This document shows, one piece after another, positions 141-49,000 of a DNA stretch of 64,000 nt. Location of the stretch: assembly GCF_003704095.1 (NCBI RefSeq), contig NW_020844146.1, positions 62,001 through 126,000 of the forward strand, in the 5' to 3' direction. A program made the position numbers and the translations under genes. A model generated the notes under the pieces. It had not been told where the DNA came from. It saw nothing but the letters and a program-made list of their open reading frames with translations, and did not search any database. The stretch comes from Pocillopora damicornis. Lineage: Eukaryota. Position 1 is the first letter of the stretch, and every line of letters begins with the position of its first letter.

Positions 141-1345
141 CTGTGTTAAGTTTTATTGCCCAGCTGTCAGGGTCACATGACGTAACTTTTCTGATTTGAC
201 CTTCAACTGCTGCTCCCTCATTGGCGCAGGCCAGTGAATACCACACGCAGGACATCACGTGGATCGTAATCGTACCAATGGCAGCATATTTTAATGCCCG
301 GATCAGTGCAGTGTTTGTTCCCAACTCATTTTCTCTTGCCCCTAAAAATGTAAGAAAAAAAAAAAAGAAAAATTAAACTAATAAGTAAAAAGGGTGAGGA
401 AGTTGATCTCATTAGTAAAAGTTATGCATGAACTTGAGATAAACTAAGTATTCTATAGGTGAAGGGGCTGGAGGCGACCGACCTTAGAGCCGAAAGTCGT
501 CGAATGGGGTGTGCGCATTCGCCACATAAACAAAAAAATTTTCTTTTACCAGCTACACTATGGATGTCCAATAAATCATTATTCTAATTTGGATATTTTG
601 GTTGTTTATAGTAACCTGGAGAAATTCGTCGTGTTCAACAACATCGGTCTGTTCTAACTCGCTCTTTTGAAATATTTAGGACTGAAACACGCGACATTTC
701 ATAAATGCAACTGAAATTGTAACACTGATCATGCTGATATAAATTTGTCTTAGGTTTTAGCCACCACAGTGTTTGAGAGGAATTATTCGTTTGCGAAACA
801 ACCAGATTCAAAAATTTACAGTCCATTAATCATCATTTTGGTAAAATACGAAAAGACCTACCAAAAAACGACGCCAGCCTGTAAACCCTTAAAATCCGGT
901 TGAGCCTCACCAAAGTCAGAAACTGATGCCATTCAAGATGTGTCTGAACTCCAAACACGAGCAGATCCAAGGGAATTAGCGTCAGTAAGTCCGGTACGAA
1001 TTTGGTCCGAAGATAGCGTCGACTAACCGATGATTTGTCTGTGACAAGAGTTCCTTTGTTGAAGTATCCAACCCGAAATTTAAGCAACACATCGGCGAGA
1101 AACAGCACATCAAAGATATAAACGAAAACCCAAAGAGTTGCATCTCGAGATTCGAAGCTTGCTTGATAAGGGACTAACAGACAAGTCAAGAAAATGCAAA
1201 TCGCGCTAACGGCTTCCCACAAACGATAAGAAGTCGTGCGAGGATTTACGGCAAAGTAAGGTTGTGGTACAAAATTAAAATCCTCATTGGCGAGGGAAAC
1301 TCCTCTGAAAGTAACTTGAACTTTATCGTCTTTAGCTGAGGACAT
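141..1345 (-). CDS. Cyclic-nucleotide-binding-domain family ion channel (KCNH/HCN/CNG/CNGK-like), first two exons; gene runs off the window start
   Basis: Exon 1 (1345-862) encodes S1-S4 (NPRTTSYRLWE..., PYQASF, DVLLKFRVGY, RRYLRTKFVPDLLTLIPLD, S4 LVRLNRILRVYRL). It splices in phase 1 to exon 2 (341-~141) encoding S5 (ALKYAAIGTITIHVMSCVWYSLAC...SW). The exon 2 donor is probably AG|GCAAG at 141/140. Confidence 0.85.
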
Positions 1346-23194: not shown

Positions 23195-23916
23195 AATAAA
23201 TACGACTCATGTGGCTCATGGAATGGAGATGTCTTACGACAAGACATTGTAAACTTTAATCTCTCGCTCACCAATAACACAAATTGATTCAACGTTTGTT
23301 AAAAATGGGAATAAAACGTTCTGAAGCCTAATGTTGAAATTCTTTGTCACAACCCCCCTGGTATGGCTTAACTTCCGCAATGTGGCACCTCTGTAACGAA
23401 AACTATTTTTGAAATACTTTGTGCTTGGTAATAGAACATAAGTTTTTTCTCGGAGTCCCTTAGGTTGTAACTTTATTGCGTTAAGAGAATTTCGAAGTTG
23501 AATAGTCCGGAGCTAACCCATGTAGGCATTTGAATACCATGGTGAAATAAACTAACTTGTGGAACAGACATGCACATCCCCTTAACTAACATTAAAAACG
23601 GCTGAATGTGGATGCTTTTTCATACAAAGAGCAACGGCATTTTGATCAATCAGTCAATTAAGCTTATTATGGCAAATGTGCACCGCCTCTGGATGGGCGT
23701 CGAAAGGATTTTCTTGAAGGGGCTTCTTCGTCGGAAATTTATCGACAGGAAGATTGATTATTCAGCAATAAATCATCTTTTTTTTCTCAGTTTTTCTGTA
23801 ACCCTAGGACCTTATCAGCTATTCCTACAAAAATAGCTTTTCCCGTCAAAATTCTTGGATCAGTCATAGAGGAGACTTACAGAAAGTTATAAACTCTGTC
23901 TTTGGGGATAGGATGC

Positions 23917-26900
23917 TTAGTTTTTGACAATCATTTGTTCAGGACCAATAGGAAACGATGCTGTTGTGTTCTCGGTCCCAGTCTCCGTAATAATCAAAGT
24001 ATCGTGCTCTCTGTACCCGCCAGCTCCAGGTTTTCCTTCGGGAACTACAATCATTGGTTCCATGGTAATGATCATCCCAGGCTCCAGAACTGTGTCCACG
24101 TGCTCGAGGAACTCTAAGCCCCAGTCTCTTCCATAGTAGTGAGAAAGAACTCCCGTGGAGTGTCCGTAGCCAATGACTCGGTATTGCAGAATGTCGTGTT
24201 CCATATAAATTTCATTCAGTTCCCGTGCAACGTCACCGCAGCGCATGCCTGGTTTGACTAGTTCCAGGCCTCTACGGTGAACCTTGTTATTGATCTCCCA
24301 GAGTTCCATATGTCGATCTGATGGCACGTGATCAAAGAATAACGTCCGCTCTAGAGCAGCATAGTTTCTATTACAAAACAAAAATACCAGCAAAATAAAT
24401 AACGTTAGAAAATCAGGCAAAAAAAAACACTCGGAAAAAAAACACTCGAGCGCTCCTAGCAGGAGTGTTGATCCCAGTATCAATCCATGCCACTTGTTGG
24501 CTCGGATACACTGAGCTGTAAGAGGCTCTTGCTAGCTTACGTATTGACTCGATCCATGTGACAAACATCCTGCATACTTATATTCACGTTCTGGGAAGTC
24601 GCAATGCTTTTGGACAGCGTTATGTACCAAGGATCGCAGGCTCTGACGAGATATTACTAGCATACTACGTTCGACCTGGCTGAATGTTTTGCGTATCAAA
24701 GCGGAGCCTCCCGCCGATCCGATTTAGTCATCATTTGTATAAGAACCTTTATGAATGTAAGAGAAGACATCTACTTTCTGAATAGATAGACTTACCCTGC
24801 TATCATTGGAAAGCAGTTCAAACTCAGAATATCGCCTTTTTGAACTCGTCGACTTGTAGGAAAGTTGTGTGCACCGTCTGTGTTTATTCCTGACTGCAGC
24901 CAAGACCACGCTAGATAGAAAAGAATGTACGCACAATGAGTAAAGTGTAATGAAAGGGGAGTAGATAACTCCATGATGGGTTATACAGGGAACTCCTCAA
25001 GTGAGGGGTACTTATCTCAGAAGTAAAAACAGGAGTAAAAATTTCACGAAGATATCTCTCACTTGAGTAAAAGAACTTTGGTATGCACCCCAGTAACATC
25101 CTTGAGTGTTGGGGTTATTTTTTGGGAGTTAAGTTAGATTTTTTGGGAAGGGCCCATCAATAAAGTTCAAAAAAAGCGTAATTAAAAATGTTCTGTTAAA
25201 GATCAAACAAGAATTCCGATAACTTACTATCTCGGATATCGATTTGTGGAAATGTTACAGCGACCTCCCGCATCATCGCACTATTTGAAGCGATCACCAC
25301 TTCATACTCTGGGACACCCTCGTGTAAGGTCTTGATTCCTGCATACGCCCCAAGCTCTGCTATTCGAGAGCCTTGACGGACTATTTCGACCTCCTCTGGA
25401 GACTTCACTCGTCGAATTTCCATGGCTGCATCTGCTACGTCGACAAATTTGGCATGCGGTAAGGCCTCTGAGAAACTTTGCAGCGAGGCTCCCATATCTG
25501 GAAACTCTACACCCACCGTCTTTGCAGACTGTAACTGATAGTTTTACAAAGAGGCGATAAATAAGAAAATATATACATACTCCTATGCAGGCATCTAAAA
25601 TCAAGAAGTAGTCTAACTAATGATCTTGGAAAGGCAACTCGCAAATTTTCGCTTTAAAGCTGCAGATTCCCAAGTAGAGGGGTCAAACGAGATAAAAAAA
25701 AAGCTATTTTTCCAAACAGTCCTAAGAGGAAAGATAATCTGCAATGCGTGGAGGACATTTGAAATCAAAGTGCAACCATTGATTTCGGGAGATGAAATGG
25801 AATTAATTTTACTTGAGAGATTATTCCTAGTTTTATATGAGTGGTTTCGCTGTATTACAGGTGGAAGACAACACAAAGTCAAACATCTGATTATTCGTGT
25901 TATTAAACGAATTTTATCTTCTTTTCGATACCTGTTGTTGCATGGCGTAGTAAAAATTTTCCTTTTGCCAGTTGGTGTAGCTAATGTTATCGCAAGTTCC
26001 TCGTCTCCATGGAAACCCATAATCTACAGCTGTAAACAGACAAGACCCATCAGTCTCAACAAAAAAATTCTACTTGAAAAAAAAAACTCTTTACTTTAAC
26101 AGTAAAGTTGTTAATTGAACAAGGACATTTGACAAGTTCTTACATGGCGTAATTGTCAATGCTTTTTCGTCAGTAATGACCAAGGCGTATTGCCGTCCCA
26201 TGGAACAGTATAGAAACTCGCTGAAGTAATAAATGTTGTAGTAAGAAGTGAACACGCATGCGTCAAGGCCATTTTTCTCCATGTAAGAACGGATACTGTT
26301 CAGACGCCGGTTCATTTCTTCAGAAGAAAATAGTGGTTGGGTCTGAAAATAGATTTTACATACACATAAAAGAACGTGAATCATGTAGAAATAAATGAAT
26401 GGAGGAATGTAAGATTTTTTAATGGCGATCGACTCATTGAGAAATAAACCGAGAAAGTAAGATAGAAAGACGAAGGAAGGAAAGAGAGTTTTCAGAATTA
26501 CCGTTACGAATAGGAAAAAACACTTTTGCGCTATAAAATAGATTGAATACTACGTAAAAGTAGTCCACAGTTTCAAGGTCAATTTTATTAGTTCACGGCG
26601 TTTTCTAGGGTCGTTTTTTTGTACCTTTCGTGTCAATCGTCGGAAATTCCTTCTTTTAGCGTCACAAACCACGCAGTAATTAATTATCGCGGAGGGGGGA
26701 GGGGGGGGATGAGGACTTTGGGGGGAATCACATAGATTTCAGGGGGGGAACAACAGAGTATAAAAAGGAGACTATAGAAAATTGACCGCCAGTGATGGAA
26801 GATCACGAGAATATTACGGAGCCTTATTCGTCGCAATTGTGGTACCCGAGCACAATACGTTTTCTTCGCACCCTGCAATCTTCTTCTACTCAGATTAAGT

Positions 26901-27167
26901 TTGAGGGGTCCACGCACCCTTCACCTCGGGATAGTCCTCCCGTTATCAGGTTATTAGTGTGTATTATTCTGAGGTCAGGGCTTCATTCTCAGACCTGTGC
27001 CTTTTTAAAAGACAGAGAGCTTTTTGAGGGGTGACCGGCCGCTCTTAATTGATAATTTAGCTAACCTTTCCGCCATTGTGAAGCTCGAGGGTTCTCGGGA
27101 AGTAATCGTGTTTCCCGCGAAATAAAACTGGTGTTAATAGGTTCTTGAGTTTGCGCAGTGTTTTCAT
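23917..27167 (-). CDS. Creatinase-like protein (creatine amidinohydrolase family, M24 pita-bread fold), divergent paralog, 6 exons
   Basis: Exons 27167-27066 (MKTLRKLKNLLTPVLFRGKHDYFPRTLELHNGGK), 26342-26144, 26029-25932 (VDYGFPWRRGTCDNISYTNWQKENFYYAMQQQ), 25534-25228, 24910-24796 and 24367-23917; all GT-AG and in frame. Motifs QSGINTDGAHN, GDILSLNCFPMIAG, ALERT, GYGHS.G.LSHYYGR, MEPM, GAGGYREHD. Confidence 0.92.
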
Positions 27168-28240
27168 CCTAGCTAACGAATCTGTAAAGCAACCACACGA
27201 TGGCTTTAATCGCAACAAAATTATGTTTAGATTAAAATAAGTAGACTTAATTTGAAGTCCATAAACTCACACGGGGTTAGAGTAAATTTTGAATGGGTTT
27301 CAGTTATATCACTGGGAAAGGTTTTTCTCCTCTTTCCTTTCGACTGAAAACTAACAGATGAAACCCCACAAACCGTAAATCAAAGACAAAATTTAACTTT
27401 TATCTTAATCCTGAGTAACGCTAACCAGCTGACCCAGACTACCCTGTAGACAATCCGTCCTTTAAAACAACAGCTAGCATCGCTGCCCCAATCCCTCGCG
27501 GCTCGTTCTCCTTCCGTCTTCTCTTTCGTGCCTCGTTCAGCACTCGAAAATGACGAAAGCTCGCTAGCAAGCCATCTTCACAGTGTTCAGGCTGAAAAGT
27601 TGGAAAAATCGTAGTCTACATTTCATGTTCAAAGTGTTCGGTCCGAAATATGTCACTGGTTTATACTGTGTATGCCACTATTCATCAGCAGGTCATAGCG
27701 TGACATAGAAATCTCTTGGTTTCGCAACGCTAAATGCTAATTCAGGCAAAGGTTTGAATAAAAAGTGTGAGCTGTGTATTTTTGAGAAATCCTTAACTTT
27801 ATAACGAATCCCAAGTGGGGCTTAGTTTTCAGTCAGTTCGCCAGCAAAAAACATCGGGGAATTGGGTAATAACAAAAATAGAAACGGCCTTAGAACCGTC
27901 CGGTGTTAGCCAGCCAGGTTTTACAAACGACTCAAACAGACAGTTTTCATGAATTTTGTACAAGGCTTCTACTGATATTTGTCACACATTAAGATCGATT
28001 CTTAGCGAATATTTAAAAGAAAACATGCTTTTTACATCTCCTCAGGTCACCTTTGGACACTGAAAAAAGAAGACGAGTCCGCTGGTAGACAAATAATATT
28101 ACAGGAGACATTATTAATCTTTCGTTCAACTGCCGGTCAACTGCAGTAGATTGCATGTCAACGGTACCATTACAATCTCGATGTATATCAGGCACTTATG
28201 TACGGACATTAATTAACCTTAGGCCGAGCTACAAACCTGA

Positions 28241-30725: not shown

Positions 30726-33507
30726 TTAGTTTTTAATGATATTGTGTTCTGGTCCATATGGGAACTTTGTAATATTTTCGCTATCTGTTTCCTTGACAAC
30801 CAGTATATCGTGTTCTCTATATCCACCTGCACCAGGCTCCCTCTCGGGTACTGTAATCATTGGTTCCATGGATACCACCATGTTTGGATGTAACACCGTC
30901 TCGATATCTTCGCGGATTTCCAGCCCAGCTTCACGTCCGTAATAATGAGAAAGAACGCCGAAGGAATGACCGTATCCAAACGTACGATATTTCAGCAAAT
31001 CGTGTTCGAGGTATAGCTCGTTCAGTTCGTTAGCTATGTCACTGCAACGCGCGCCTGGCTTTATGAGCTCCAGGCCCCGACGATGAACCTTGCAGTTGAC
31101 TTCCCAGAGTTCTATATGCCGGTCTGATGGCACGTGATCACAAAAGAGTGTACGCTCAAGTGCTATGTAGTATCTAGGGAAGACATAAAGATACAGAACT
31201 GAGAATTGACGTGCAAAGGGGCTAACTGGAAAGAAACACAGTAGTCGATTAATGCTCCGGCTTGCCATGCCTGTTCAGGCATTGTGGAAAATTATTATGG
31301 CTGCGGGTTGCCATATTTGTCCAGCAGCTCGGAATAAAGGGATAGAAAACGGAGATCTGATAATGATGATGCTGCAACAACTTTTCAACTAAAAATTAAG
31401 TTTTTCAAAAACATATTCATATGTTTTTCTTACAATTTCTGTTTATCATCTCCATAGAGAAAGGACTGGAACCTAATGAAGCCAGACCTGTCGATTCCGA
31501 GATTACCGCACAAAGCATTGGACCTCGGAGTCTTCCGTTGTAAATAAAGTCTTTTAAATCAAAGCTATATGATTTATACTCGAGTAATTACTGCGCTTGG
31601 CCCTCTGTCGCAAGTGTCCCAGATAGCAGACACCTGACGTTAAGCAGATTGCATAAAAAATTTTAAACAACAACTTACCCAGCTATCATAGGAAAGCAGT
31701 TCAAACTGAGTATGTCTCCCTTACGCAATCGCCGCGTGGTAACTGGATTATGAGCACCATCGGTATTAATTCCTGATTGGAACCAAGTCCATGCTGAGAA
31801 ATACAAGAGCGACAATAAAATTAACCAAAAAACCCTGCAACCCTGCGCTCCACATTTTTCTTGTAATTGAAGACTCCCAAGAAACAAAAAGAAAATGAAT
31901 AAAGGAATTTAAAAAGGATGAACAATTGAAACATACTATCTCGTATTTCAGAATGTGGATATGTGTCGGCGATCTCTTTGACCATCGCGTTTGTTGACGC
32001 CAAAGCAATCTCGTGCTCAGCGGCACCTTCCTTGATTGCCTTAACAACTGCCTCTCCTCCAAGATCAGCGATACGTGCTCCTTGCTTTATAAGTTCAATT
32101 TCTTCGGGAGATTTAATCATGCGCATTTTCATGGTCGGTTGACTGACATCTACGAATTTTGCATAAGGTAAAGCATCGGAGAACTTTCGGTGACTGTCGA
32201 GATGGACCCAATCAAACTCCAGACCTACTGTTTTCGCGTCGCCAACCTTGTAGAGATAATTGACGTCTTAGTGACTGCTAAAAAGGGAAAATATCCTGCG
32301 ACAAATTTTACGATCACAGTAATCCTCATGCAAACCTGTTGTTGTACAGCGTGATAGTAATTGTCTCTTTTCCAGTCCGTATAGACGATGTTCTCACCGA
32401 ATGTTCGGCGCCACGGCTGACCGTAGTCGATGCCTGCAAAATGGAGAAAAATCGCGTTGCACTTTTCGAACAAATGTCCAATGCCTCGACAGTTTTCGTG
32501 AATATCATGCAAACGCTGATAGCAACACGTCCAAATTATTTCTTTTTACACCNNNNNNNNNNNNNNNNNNNNNNNNNNNNNNNNNNNNNNNNNNNNNNNN
32601 NNNNNNNNNNNNNNNNNNNNNNNNNNNNNNNNNNNNNNNNNNNNNNNNNNNNNNNNNNNNNNNNNNNNNNNNNNNNNNNNNNNNNNNNNNNNNCCCCCCC
32701 CCTTCCCACTCCAAGGCGATCAATGATTACTACCAGAACCTTACTGAAAAATAAAATTTTAAAAAATAGGGAAAAGAAGAAGATTATACAGCAAAGCTTA
32801 CCAGCAGAAACACTTGTCGTCTTCGACGGGGTGACAATGAGCGCATACGGCCGACCAAAGTAACAGTACAGGAAATCGCTGTAATAATGTATGTTGTGAT
32901 AGGATGTAAATACGCATGCGTCAATCCCGTTTGTCTCCATATGGCGTCGAATCATGTCCAGACGGCGTTGCATTTCTTGGGACGAGAAGGTTGGTTTCAC
33001 CTACAATTGGAAAAGCGTGATGATGAGTAACTGTTGGCTTGGGTATGAGCCCTTGTACACTCTTAGCTTGTTAGTTCGTTTCCTCGAGATGAGAATTGTT
33101 TGCCTAAAACGACTCAGTCTTTTAGCTTCTGGCCTCCTGTCTTTAATAAGATGCTAAAATTTCAATTTCCGTAAATTAATTATATAACACATTATTACGC
33201 ACACAGGTAGAAGAAGAAAGTTTTTTAGGGTCGGCAAGCTAGGAGACTGGGTATATATTTTTTGCGTTTTTAGCCGTGACTTGTTCAGTAATCAGATCTT
33301 ATACCTCATTGCAAACAGACATTGCAAAGACAAAGAGCAAATTGCACGCTTGACAAGAATAACATGAACACAAACCTTTTCGCCATTATGACATTCAAGT
33401 GTACGAATGTCTTTGTGATCGCTCAGCACATTCAAGCTTAACAACCGTTGAAAGACTGGAACCAAAGTTCGTCGAGAAAAGCGTACGTTTTTGGTCAAAA
33501 GAAACAT
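30726..33507 (-). CDS. Creatinase (creatine amidinohydrolase, EC 3.5.3.3), canonical paralog, 6 exons, with a putative mitochondrial presequence
   Basis: Exons 33507-33376, 33000-32802, 32433-32336, 32246-31937, 31793-31679 and 31173-30726; all GT-AG and in frame. Near-colinear with recalled Pseudomonas creatinase: FTSYHNIHYYSDFLYCYFGRPYAL, GQPWRRT...NIVYTDW.RDNY, MRMIKS.EE, TWTWFQSGINTDGAHNPVTTR, YRTFGYGHSFG.LSHYYGREAGLE, MVVSMEPMI, ENITKFPYGPEHNII. Confidence 0.95.
32553..32693. other. Assembly gap (N run) within creatinase intron 2
   Basis: Run of N flanked by poly-C. Confidence 1.
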
Positions 33508-46051: not shown

Positions 46052-49000
46052 ATGGAAAGTATAGAGTTGTTTGCAGTTGAAATTTACGGGGATGGATGTT
46101 TTTATCCGGGAGATGTTGTGTACGGCGACGTATATTTGAAGACAAATGAAGAACTGACGGTCAGAGAAATTCGCATCGAGTTTTATGGGGAAGCAAAGGT
46201 TTCATGGTCCGAGGCGGCGAGAAAGAAGCGACTTGGAACGCGTGATTACTCGAATTACGAGCAGTATTTAAACATTGCAGTAACAGTTTATGGAAAGGGT
46301 AAGAAGCCACTGTACCTAGCTTGTAAATATTGAATACTGCGGGTGTTTTAAAATGCATAATTGATCGCAATATTGATCGGTGAAAATCAGCTGGCTCTTG
46401 AGTCATAAGTCACTTCGATTTTGCATTGCCGCATAATATACAACTGAACTTTGCGGTTTGTTGCATTGGCTATCTTAATATTCAGTTGCAAATGCTTTGC
46501 TGGGCATATTTCAAATATATACTGCTGTTTACTGCAGCTTATAATTCACTGTGAACTGATATCTCTTTATTCCTATTCACTTGAATGATACTTGATAACT
46601 TTCATGACTGAAGAAAATTTGCTTGCAGACACTGACGGCAAATTAAAGAAATAAAAAAGCACAACATTTTGTTGAGATCTTTAAGTTTTCAGGGGGTTGG
46701 ATTAAAAGATTTTGTTTAACAGGTTATCATATTCGACCCCTCGAGGCTCTCCGTCACTTCATGCAAAAATACGTTTCCAAAGCAAATGTCATCTCCAAGT
46801 ACTTTCAATTTAACTACTTAGAGTTAGCTTGTAAAATCGATATTACATTCGCTCTTGATCAGAACTTTCGGGTAAGATCTGTCGATCTCTAAAATGCAGA
46901 GACAGGCTCGGCTGCGCCTCGTGTGCCATTTGTTCTGTTTGTAACACATCTTGTTAGTAGACGTACGTCATCTGTAACATGTTACTGAACGTACACAGCC
47001 GGAGTTAAGGAATCTATTTTCACTCTACTATGAAATTAATCTCTTAACAGTTCCGGGTCAAATCGGCGCAAATCCAGTCTTGCCCAGTGGGGAGCATTCC
47101 TTTCCATTCGAGGTTCGGCTCCCAGAAGACAACCTTCCCACCACATTTGAAGGAAAACATGGCCACGTGAAATACTGGCTCAAGGCCATTCTTGATCGGC
47201 CGTGGAAAGATGAGATTAAGATCGTAGAACCGTTCACCGTCACGGAGAGGATTGATGTTAATCAGCCGGAGTTTCTCGTAAGATCATGCACCGATCATTC
47301 AGTACAATGTAAACTACATGAATATATAATTATAAAGCGCATGGCTACACTATTAATGGTAATACTGATGGTAAAGAATTTGAACTCGGAGCACCATTCG
47401 TTCAAATGGAGATGGAAAGAGAGCGCGAAAGAGTAACTCCGAGGCGCGAAAAATAGAAAAACCAACAAACACACCCACACACACATGCAAACCTCGTTGC
47501 TTAATCTTTTGACACCTATCTTAAAATGGGAAATTTTCCTGTTGCCGTTCAGTAATGACCGAGGCGGTGGGGGGGGGCTCAAGACGCAGCTTTGTCCCAG
47601 AGGACAACGGACCATCACCATAGGTTCCCTTGTTCCTAAGTTTCGTTGTGTTGAACTAAAACGAAATTTGGATTGAAAAGAGAGATATCAATATCATGTT
47701 TTGTTTCGCTTTAAGCGCCCAGCTCAAATCCAGGAAGACCGGACAATGGGTTGCCTGTGCTGTGTCTCTGGGCCACTGAGTGTCACAGTCAGGACAGACA
47801 GAGCAGCCTATTGTGGAGGTGAACTTATGACAGTGACAGTGTACGCTAACAACCAGTCGAAACACAGGATTCTTGGAGTGGAATTAGAGCTCATTAAGGA
47901 CACTGTATTCGTCGCATCTGGAGGTGGGTGGAACATTCGACCTTTAGTGTATTTCTCACAACAGAGTTATTCCCTTAGCGCACGTTCATTGGCTGACGCG
48001 GTGCTAAGCAAAGTACGTTAGTTCGTTTAACAAGTTATACTTAGCATGAACGAATTACTTTTTTCCGTTCTCTCTAGGTAAAAAGGTTTTCAGTGCTGAA
48101 ACTATCGCAACTATCACAAAAGCTTGTAATAAGACCTCGAACACAGACGGACATGACTTCTTTGAGATGGTGCCATTTCTCATCCCATCCTTAACGCCAA
48201 CTATGAAGAACTGCAGGTGTATAAAGATTTCGTACCAAATGAAGGTAAATTTTCCATGTTCACAGTTGTTTTTCCAGGGTTCCAATAACCGAAAGACGCT
48301 CTCAGACAAAACAGACACGAATCATCTTGAAATACGTTATCTAAATTTTTCAAGTATCTCGTTGGCACCCCGCCTGCACTCTTCCGGGCTCCATCTTAAT
48401 CATCGTCGGTCATGTCTGGATTTTATTTTCTATATTTCTTTCTTTTTTTCTATTTTTCCTTGGTTTACGGTGAAGATAATTTTACAAATTGCAAAAAATT
48501 AACTCATGGCAGTAATTAATATTAATGTTAAATAATAGAGTGCATTTCGACTTAGTTGGGATACAAGCAAGAAGGTAGTAAGAGATGTCTGGAGAAAAAT
48601 TTTAGTAAAAAACGAGTGACAATCAGTGACTGGTTTCTGAGCCATACCGCGAAAGTGGTGTGAGTTTTCTAAAACGCCTCTGACCACAGAAAATAGTTAA
48701 ACAGACCCAATGCAAGAGTCAATTTCAACTTAATTACTCCTATCTTTCTATTTCCTAATCTGTTCTTCTAGTCCACTCTGCTGATACGAGGATCCGTAAA
48801 CTTCTGTGTCCATTTACCAATCACCATCGGCTCCATTCCCTGCCAAGTGAGTACATCTCGCAGACCATCCTTAAAAGGCTCCAACTCTTCGATATCATCA
48901 GGTGTCACGTTCATGGGATTCCCGTCAACGTCTATGGAACACTCTGACGGTATGATATCATTTAATGAAGAAGGTTAAAAGTCTTACTTTCCGGATACAC

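What the first reader, a model, noticed from the sequence alone, without database searches (positions are those of the whole stretch)
23917..27167. Second creatinase paralog keeps the catalytic core but has remodelled active-site neighbours: possible new amidinohydrolase specificity
Seen, canonical versus divergent copy: CYFGRPY vs CSMGRQY (Phe62-equivalent to Met), GQPWRR vs GFPWRR, WTWFQ vs WSWLQ, AHNPVT vs AHNFPT, GYYIALER vs GNYAALER, RTFGYGHSFG vs RVIGYGHSTG, and YGREAGLEIRED vs YGRDWGLEFLEH. The His232, Glu262, Glu358, Arg64 and Arg335 equivalents are retained and there are no stops. Inference: neofunctionalisation towards another guanidino acid, such as guanidinoacetate, taurocyamine or another invertebrate guanidino compound.
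Basis: partly seen in the sequence, partly recalled or inferred. Interest (0 to 1): 0.75.

Follow-up and report, generated by a model that had tools for sequence, protein, structure and literature searches.

The report
Divergent second creatinase gene in corals
A stony-coral genome carries, next to an ordinary creatinase gene, a second, expressed and well-conserved copy that keeps the catalytic residues but has changed many otherwise invariant positions, so it probably does a somewhat different, still untested, job.

Summary
Window 23917-27167 (minus strand) is an intact six-exon creatinase gene ("D"). It lies 3.6 kb downstream of a canonical six-exon copy ("C", 30726-33507) with the same intron positions and phases.

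D is not decaying:
- Poly(A) RNA contigs from 4 studies show all five introns spliced.
- Orthologs with the same changed residues occur in other corals.
- dN/dS among orthologs is 0.02-0.09.
- On an exon-6 tree, D forms a 100/100 clade on a stem eight times longer than C's, yet with an equally shallow crown.

D departs from the family residue at 39 of 171 columns that are at least 95% conserved; C does so at 9.

These changes are spread along the protein and are not concentrated beside the five key residues (5/22 vs 34/144). Four flagged sites also vary in deuterostome paralogs.

A new substrate is plausible but not shown, and no specific guanidino compound is supported.

The parts
27066..27167 (-). 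D copy exon 1. The ATG is at 27167. It encodes a 24-aa basic N-terminal extension, then the RTLELHNGGK block that starts the creatinase N-domain.
   Evidence: Sequence; boundaries; RNA joint 26342|27066 in 4 of 4 runs. The ortholog L010 has a 68% identical exon 1.
26144..26342 (-). D copy exon 2 (creatinase N-domain). It carries CSMGRQY: F62M, R64 kept, P65Q. It also carries H49Y.
   Evidence: 1CHM alignment. CSMGRQ is present in 6 of 6 D-type sequences seen (window, L010, P0416-P0419).
25932..26029 (-). D copy exon 3. It carries GFPWRR: Q86F here, Q86Y in three orthologs.
   Evidence: RNA joints 25534|25932 and 26029|26144.
25228..25534 (-). D copy exon 4 (end of the N-domain and start of the M24 domain). 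The acceptor is at 25534, per the RNA.
   Evidence: joints. LQSAKTVG is conserved in L003 and L008. PDB creatinase match.
24796..24910 (-). D copy exon 5. It carries WSWLQSGINTDGAHNFPTS: H232 kept, with T220S, F222L, P234F and V235P.
   Evidence: This stretch (WSWLQ...AHNFPTS) is identical in L003, L005, L006 and L008, so with the window 5 of 5 D-type sequences carry it; over the whole exon L003, L005 and L006 are 100% identical and L008 differs at two other positions. Joints.
23917..24367 (-). D copy exon 6 with the stop codon (M24 pita-bread domain). E262, R335 and E358 are kept. Changes: Y257N, T259A, T319V, F320I, F326T, E336D, A337W, L341F, R342L, D344H.
   Evidence: PF00557. W337, L342 and H344 are present in 14 of 14.
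30726..33507 (-). Canonical creatinase copy (C), the comparator. Its six exons are 33507-33376, 33000-32802, 32433-32336, 32246-31937, 31793-31679 and 31173-30726. Intron positions and phases are the same as in D. An N run lies inside intron 2 and was left untouched.
   Evidence: C-type orthologs are L007, L010 and L012.

Best explanation
Shown: D is the downstream member of an old tandem duplication of an animal (coral) creatinase gene. It is transcribed, correctly spliced, and kept under strong purifying selection in several coral lineages.

Shown: after the duplication it went through a burst of amino-acid replacement at positions that are otherwise nearly invariant in creatinases. These include residues directly flanking the substrate-binding and catalytic residues. 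It then froze in the new state.

Inferred: all five residues held to bind and cleave creatine are retained (their roles are recalled from the literature). D therefore most likely still folds as a two-domain creatinase dimer and still hydrolyses an amidino/guanidino carboxylic acid to urea plus an amine.

Inferred: its pocket and lid are reshaped, so its substrate preference or kinetics differ from the canonical copy. The substrate itself is unknown.
For: - Gene structure and identical intron phases in both copies.
- All five introns are spliced in RNA contigs of 4 of 4 runs from 4 studies. One 3311-nt contig covers all six exons.
- 11 of the 23 listed runs are on record as RNA. The RNA and probable-RNA rows hold 0.35-0.47 of the words, about the exon share of the stretch.
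- C and D are 62.7% identical over 383 aligned residues. dN is 0.28 and synonymous sites are saturated, so the duplication is old.
- The tandem order is conserved in another coral contig: L010 has C exon 6, then D exons 1-2 about 3.3 kb downstream.
- D-type orthologs are 81-95% identical in exon 6. They form 11 clusters at 90% identity, one of them from Desmophyllum pertusum. The next hits fall to 72% or less.
- dN/dS of D against its orthologs is 0.022-0.067, and 0.094 for L003 vs L008, where dS is 0.37.
- On the exon-6 tree, the D clade has 15 rows with support 100/100 and a stem of 0.395. The C clade has 14 rows with support 99/98 and a stem of 0.049. Crown depths are 0.080 and 0.099.
- D differs from the family residue at 39 of 171 columns that are at least 95% conserved in 119 full-length creatinases; C differs at 9 (one search gave the same 39 and 9 over 174 such columns). 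At 29 such columns no D-type sequence has the family residue.
- The five key residues are retained.
- More distant homologs that lost these residues look different: P0031, P0034, P0090 and P0137.
Against: - No biochemical or structural test was possible.
- The changes are not concentrated near the key residues in 1D: 5/22 versus 34/144. The divergence is protein-wide and could reflect altered partners, stability or localisation rather than substrate.
- F62, Q86, P234 and F326 also vary among deuterostome paralogs.
- The family sample is biased. It is the 119 best hits to one sea-cucumber protein and is mostly marine bacteria, which inflates the count of 'invariant' columns.
- The roles of R64, H232, E262, R335 and E358 are recalled from Coll et al. 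1990, which I could not read here.
- Most dN/dS pairs have saturated dS, so the ratios are rough.
Confidence: 0.5

Rival explanations
1. Same chemistry, different context. D is still a creatine amidinohydrolase. It was kept because it differs from C in expression, subcellular location, stability or kinetics (subfunctionalisation), not in substrate.
For: - All five key residues are kept.
- The substitutions are spread over the whole protein rather than focused on the site.
- The two copies have different N-terminal extensions in exon 1.
- Several flagged positions are tolerant in other animal paralogs.
Against: - Replacements occur at residues invariant in 119 of 119 family members and directly next to R335 (E336D, A337W). 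Others are close to E262 (Y257N) or two residues after the family-conserved His324 (F326T; F in 118 of 119).
- The stem is eight times longer than C's. That is more change than a simple shift in regulation needs.
Confidence: 0.3
2. D is mainly a partner subunit. Creatinase sites are built from two subunits (recalled). D may therefore pair with C to form heterodimers, with modified or regulatory sites, rather than acting as an independent enzyme.
For: - Tandem linkage of C and D is conserved in at least two corals (window; L010).
- D changed both in the N-domain loop carrying R64 (F62M, P65Q, Q86F/Y) and in the 336-344 stretch after R335. This pattern would fit a remodelled inter-subunit surface.
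- The divergence is protein-wide.
Against: - There is no direct evidence of interaction.
- The interface residues could not be mapped.
- The catalytic residues are fully retained, which a purely regulatory subunit would not need.
Confidence: 0.12
3. D is a decaying or non-functional duplicate.
For: It departs from family-invariant residues far more often than C.
Against: - The reading frame is intact and all splice sites are canonical.
- Spliced poly(A) transcripts occur in 4 of 4 runs.
- dN/dS is 0.02-0.09.
- The changed residues are fixed across orthologs.
Confidence: 0.01

Closest known systems
Bacterial creatinase (creatine amidinohydrolase, EC 3.5.3.3; PDB 1CHM, 1KP0, 7YTO)
   Same: - Every exon matches these structures: exon 6 E = 3.6e-65, exon 2 E = 2.8e-15, exon 5 E = 5.5e-16.
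- It has the two-domain architecture of a creatinase N-domain plus the M24 pita-bread domain.
- R64, H232, E262, R335 and E358 are retained.
   Different: - It is an intron-bearing animal gene with an N-terminal extension.
- 39 of 171 family-conserved columns are changed. They include Y257N, F320I, F326T, E336D, A337W, R342L and D344H, and these states were seen in 0 of 119 full-length family members.
The canonical coral copy in the same window, and animal 'creatinase-like' proteins (sea urchins, sea cucumber, hemichordates, amphioxus; NCBI names)
   Same: - It has the same exon-intron plan as C, is in tandem with it, and has the same length class.
- Animal paralogs also vary at F62, Q86, P234 and F326.
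   Different: - D is only 62.7% identical to C.
- It forms its own clade on a long stem.
- The 336-344 changes and Y257N are not seen in any of the 9 deuterostome sequences in the family set.
Other M24 enzymes with a creatinase-type N-domain: ectoine hydrolase DoeA, DMSP lyase DddP, Xaa-Pro dipeptidases
   Same: They share the fold. There are weak profile matches at 18-49 bits, far below the curated cut-offs of 171-850, and weak PDB matches.
   Different: D is far closer to true creatinases (about 60-65% identity) than to any of these. No residue pattern links it to them.

Membership tests
Creatinase / creatine amidinohydrolase family (M24, Creatinase_N + Peptidase_M24) | Two-domain architecture: creatinase N-terminal domain followed by the M24 pita-bread domain | tested here: met
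   Exon 6 matches PF00557 at 68.9 bits. The exon-2 homologs P0416-P0419 carry PF01321. All of exons 2-6 match the solved creatinases 1CHM, 1KP0 and 7YTO.
Creatinase / creatine amidinohydrolase family (M24, Creatinase_N + Peptidase_M24) | Retention of the catalytic His232 and the ligand-binding Glu262, Glu358, Arg64 and Arg335 (roles recalled from Coll et al. 1990, not read here) | tested here: met
   All five are present in both D and C. The numbering was checked against the 1CHM alignments.
Creatinase / creatine amidinohydrolase family (M24, Creatinase_N + Peptidase_M24) | Conformity to the residues that are invariant across known creatinases | tested here: not met
   D differs at 39 of 171 columns that are at least 95% conserved in 119 full-length members; C differs at 9. 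Twelve of those columns are invariant in 119 of 119, among them Y257, F320, E336, A337, R342 and D344.
Creatinase / creatine amidinohydrolase family (M24, Creatinase_N + Peptidase_M24) | Hydrolysis of creatine to sarcosine and urea | not testable with these tools
   An enzyme assay is needed.
Creatinase / creatine amidinohydrolase family (M24, Creatinase_N + Peptidase_M24) | Homodimer in which each site is closed by the partner's N-domain loop (recalled) | not tested
Processed or decaying pseudogene | Frame disruptions, no transcription, dN/dS near 1 | tested here: not met
   The frame is intact, transcripts are spliced, and dN/dS is 0.02-0.09.

The most novel reading that the evidence does not exclude
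Stony corals possess a dedicated second amidinohydrolase, evolved from creatinase, that releases urea from a guanidino or amidino acid other than creatine. This would give the host a second route from a nitrogen-rich osmolyte or phosphagen to urea, a nitrogen form its algal symbionts can use.
Probability: 0.3. Interest if true: 0.65.

Novelty: new variant of a known kind. Interest (0 to 1): 0.42.

Why it matters
Animal-encoded creatinases are almost unstudied. Three full-text searches found no paper on a host-encoded coral or invertebrate creatinase: 'creatinase-like' (0 papers), creatinase + coral (15 papers) and creatinase + invertebrates (12 papers). I judged these from titles and abstract starts only.

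A conserved, expressed paralog with a rebuilt neighbourhood around an intact catalytic set is a ready-made natural experiment on specificity in the creatinase fold. This enzyme matters for clinical creatinine assays.

In corals it could also bear on host production of urea for the symbionts. The genome also carries several phosphagen-kinase loci and sarcosine-dehydrogenase-type genes, so guanidino-compound metabolism is clearly active.

Without an assay, however, this remains a well-documented lead and not a discovery.

Tried and rejected
- **3D mapping of the substitutions.** Not possible. I used sequence distance to the key residues instead. It gave no enrichment.
- **Active-site description in open papers.** Searches, and passages read in PMC7568399, PMC5650733 and PMC11685841, gave no residue list. 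Two tries to open Bazan et al. 1994 by PubMed id and by a PMC id that I recalled found nothing held. The residue roles are therefore recalled.
- **Full-length named coral proteins.** The search with the sea-cucumber protein P0180 listed only bacteria and deuterostomes in its best 120. Exon queries see only proteins of 0.55-1.75 times their length, so they see only short ORF-type predictions.
- **Dating the duplication.** The exon-6 tree leaves D, the coral C clade and a 4-row group unresolved (support 38/0). No donor or time can be given beyond 'before the sampled corals diverged'.
- **A creatinase-specific NCBIfam model.** None matched.
- **Metabolic neighbours in the window.** None were found: an ion-channel ORF and an arrestin.
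- **Pseudogene reading.** Rejected.
- **Kinship with DoeA or DddP.** Rejected as far too distant.
- **Supplements.** Supplementary files of papers were not opened. Gene lists in coral transcriptome papers may mention these genes.

Full report
**What is there.** The window is eukaryotic DNA at about 32-42% G+C. On its minus strand lie two creatinase genes in tandem.

The finding's coordinates run exactly from the stop codon to the first ATG of the downstream gene, which I call D. I read six exons from the sequence, all flanked by GT..AG. The upstream gene, C, spans 30726-33507. It has six exons at the same positions and phases. Exons 2, 3 and 5 have identical lengths (199, 98 and 115 nt). Exons 4 and 6 differ by one codon each. 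An N run lies in an intron of C; I left it as it is.

A six-frame search of the whole 234-Mb assembly with D exon 6 finds only these two copies.

**The observation.** Alignments to the solved *Pseudomonas* enzyme 1CHM fix the numbering at SEQRES index + 1. The changes in D are:
- F62M and P65Q in the CSFGRPY loop
- Q86F
- T220S and F222L
- P234F and V235P, right after His232
- Y257N and T259A, before Glu262
- T319V and F320I
- F326T
- E336D and A337W, right after Arg335
- L341F, R342L and D344H

Arg64, His232, Glu262, Arg335 and Glu358 are kept in both copies. The roles of these five residues are recalled from Coll et al. 1990. I could not read that paper, and the open literature I searched gave no residue list.

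**Is it a live gene?** Yes.
- A look-up of public runs lists 23 that hold the stretch or part of it; 11 are on record as RNA and others are guessed to be. The RNA rows hold 0.35-0.47 of its words, about the share made up by exons.
- I laid contigs of four RNA runs from four studies on the gene. All four show the five joints 24367|24796, 24910|25228, 25534|25932, 26029|26144 and 26342|27066, each CT..AC on the plus strand. One 3311-nt contig spans all six exons.
- The RNA corrected my exon-4 acceptor from 25528 to 25534, adding Leu-Gln. The same LQSAKTVG is encoded in two orthologs.

The identity figures were computed with the shorter exon 4.

**Age and selection.** C and D are 62.7% identical over 383 aligned residues of exons 2-6. 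dN is 0.28 and synonymous sites are saturated (pS 0.80), so the duplication is old.

A search of 1.84 billion cluster representatives with D exon 6 returned three ORF-type proteins at 86-91% identity, and then a drop to 70%. One of the three is a *Desmophyllum pertusum* protein. This places the window among stony corals.

The word-index search shows 11 D-type clusters at 81-95% identity, then nothing above 72%.

A scan of metagenome contigs gave 15 loci. Seven carry D-type exons: L003, L004, L005, L006 and L008, plus L010. L010 has the end of a C-type gene followed about 3.3 kb downstream by D-type exons 1 and 2. The tandem order is therefore conserved.

The D-specific residues are fixed in these orthologs:
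- CSMGRQ in 6 of 6 sequences
- G(F/Y)PWRR in 4 of 4
- AHNFPTS in 5 of 5
- NY(A/S)ALER in 15 of 15
- W337, L342 and H344 in 14 of 14
- Position 326 is T in 12, with single S, M and L

dN/dS between the window's D and its orthologs is 0.022-0.067 and could not be computed for L008, where dS was saturated. It is 0.094 for L003 vs L008, the one pair with unsaturated dS (0.37). The C copy gives 0.016-0.072.

**Pattern of divergence.** I built a maximum-likelihood tree of the exon-6 region with 88 rows and 148 columns.

| Clade | Rows | Support | Stem length | Mean crown depth |
|---|---|---|---|---|
| D | 15 | 100/100 | 0.395 | 0.080 |
| C (coral) | 14 | 99/98 | 0.049 | 0.099 |

They show a burst of change followed by constraint. 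D's sister group is unresolved (support 38/0), so the duplication cannot be dated more closely.

I also compared both copies with 119 full-length family members, comprising 9 deuterostome sequences and 110 other, mostly bacterial, sequences. D departs from the family residue at 39 of 171 columns that are at least 95% conserved; C departs at 9. At 29 such columns no D-type sequence has the family residue. This sample is the set of best hits to one query, so conservation is overstated. The C/D asymmetry is not affected by that.

- The changes are not concentrated next to the five key residues along the sequence. Within ±3 residues, 5 of 22 conserved columns changed, against 34 of 144 elsewhere (Fisher p = 1). 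Within ±5 the figures are 7/34 against 32/132. C has 0/22 and 0/34 near the sites.
- Sea-urchin and hemichordate paralogs also vary at 62, 86, 234 and 326. The truly unusual changes are therefore Y257N, F320I, E336D, A337W, R342L and D344H.
- D's new states are not shared with the more distant homologs that have lost catalytic residues. No existing subfamily offers a functional hint.
- No 3D test was possible.

**Reading.** D is a functional enzyme-like paralog with an intact catalytic set and a reshaped surround.
- An altered substrate preference or altered kinetics is the most likely outcome, at about 0.5.
- An unchanged substrate with different regulation or location is about 0.3.
- A role mainly as a partner subunit of C is about 0.12.

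Both copies have basic, acid-free N-terminal extensions that bacterial creatinases lack. This could be a mitochondrial presequence, inferred from composition only.

The genome also has at least six phosphagen-kinase loci and four FAO_M hits of the sarcosine or dimethylglycine dehydrogenase type. Only one weak amidinotransferase-family hit was found.

**Novelty.** NCBI names such animal proteins 'creatinase-like' or 'hypothetical'. I found no paper on a host-encoded coral creatinase or on this paralog (listings and abstract starts only).

I class it as a new variant of a known kind. It is a coral-specific subfamily within the creatinase family, and its function is untested.

Noticed in passing
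L003:1286-1363 and L005:1286-1363: A stray 26-aa piece 85% identical to D exon 4 lies upstream of D exon 3, where exon 2 would be expected. No exon-2 match was found in the 1.5 kb upstream. This could be a rearrangement, a misassembly or a longer intron in that coral.
   Followed up: no
L009:283-1452: An intronless creatinase ORF on a 1757-nt ENA contig is 66-80% identical, exon by exon, to the coral canonical copy. It may be cDNA of another cnidarian in a metatranscriptome.
   Followed up: no
window 27184-27250: RNA contigs of two runs (X7, X11) leave the genome at 27184, 17 nt upstream of the D start codon. Two others (X1, X10) read on to 27250. This suggests an alternative 5' UTR exon.
   Followed up: no
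window, downstream of 23850 (minus-strand 3' side of D): The 3311-nt RNA contig of run X10 extends 1724 nt beyond window position 23850. This could be a long 3' UTR or read-through.
   Followed up: no
window 27096-27167 (D exon 1) and 33409-33507 (C exon 1): Both coral copies begin with basic, acid-free extensions ahead of the conserved RTLE(L/C)HNG block: 24 aa in D and 33 aa in C. Bacterial creatinases lack them. They may be mitochondrial presequences (inference from composition).
   Followed up: partly
window 32434-32801 (intron 2 of the canonical copy): This intron contains a run of N. It was left as given.
   Followed up: no
window 836-1345 (-), 47083-48499 (+): The neighbouring ORFs match Ion_trans (E = 4.7e-14), Arrestin_N (E = 8.4e-17) and Arrestin_C. 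These are ordinary animal genes with no metabolic link to creatinase.
   Followed up: partly
G000 contigs C2813, C1502, C983, C3794, C2178, C2075, C694; C901, C3883, C3637, C1291: The genome has 15 exon-level matches to the ATP:guanidino kinase domain on 7 contigs. It also has 4 FAO_M matches of the sarcosine or dimethylglycine dehydrogenase type. Only one weak amidinotransferase-family match was found, on C1129.
   Followed up: no
proteins P0184, P0185, P0186, P0193, P0194: Sea-urchin and hemichordate genomes carry several creatinase-like paralogs. At least P0184 and P0185 vary at positions 62, 86, 234 and 326. Animal creatinase paralogy is wider than corals.
   Followed up: partly
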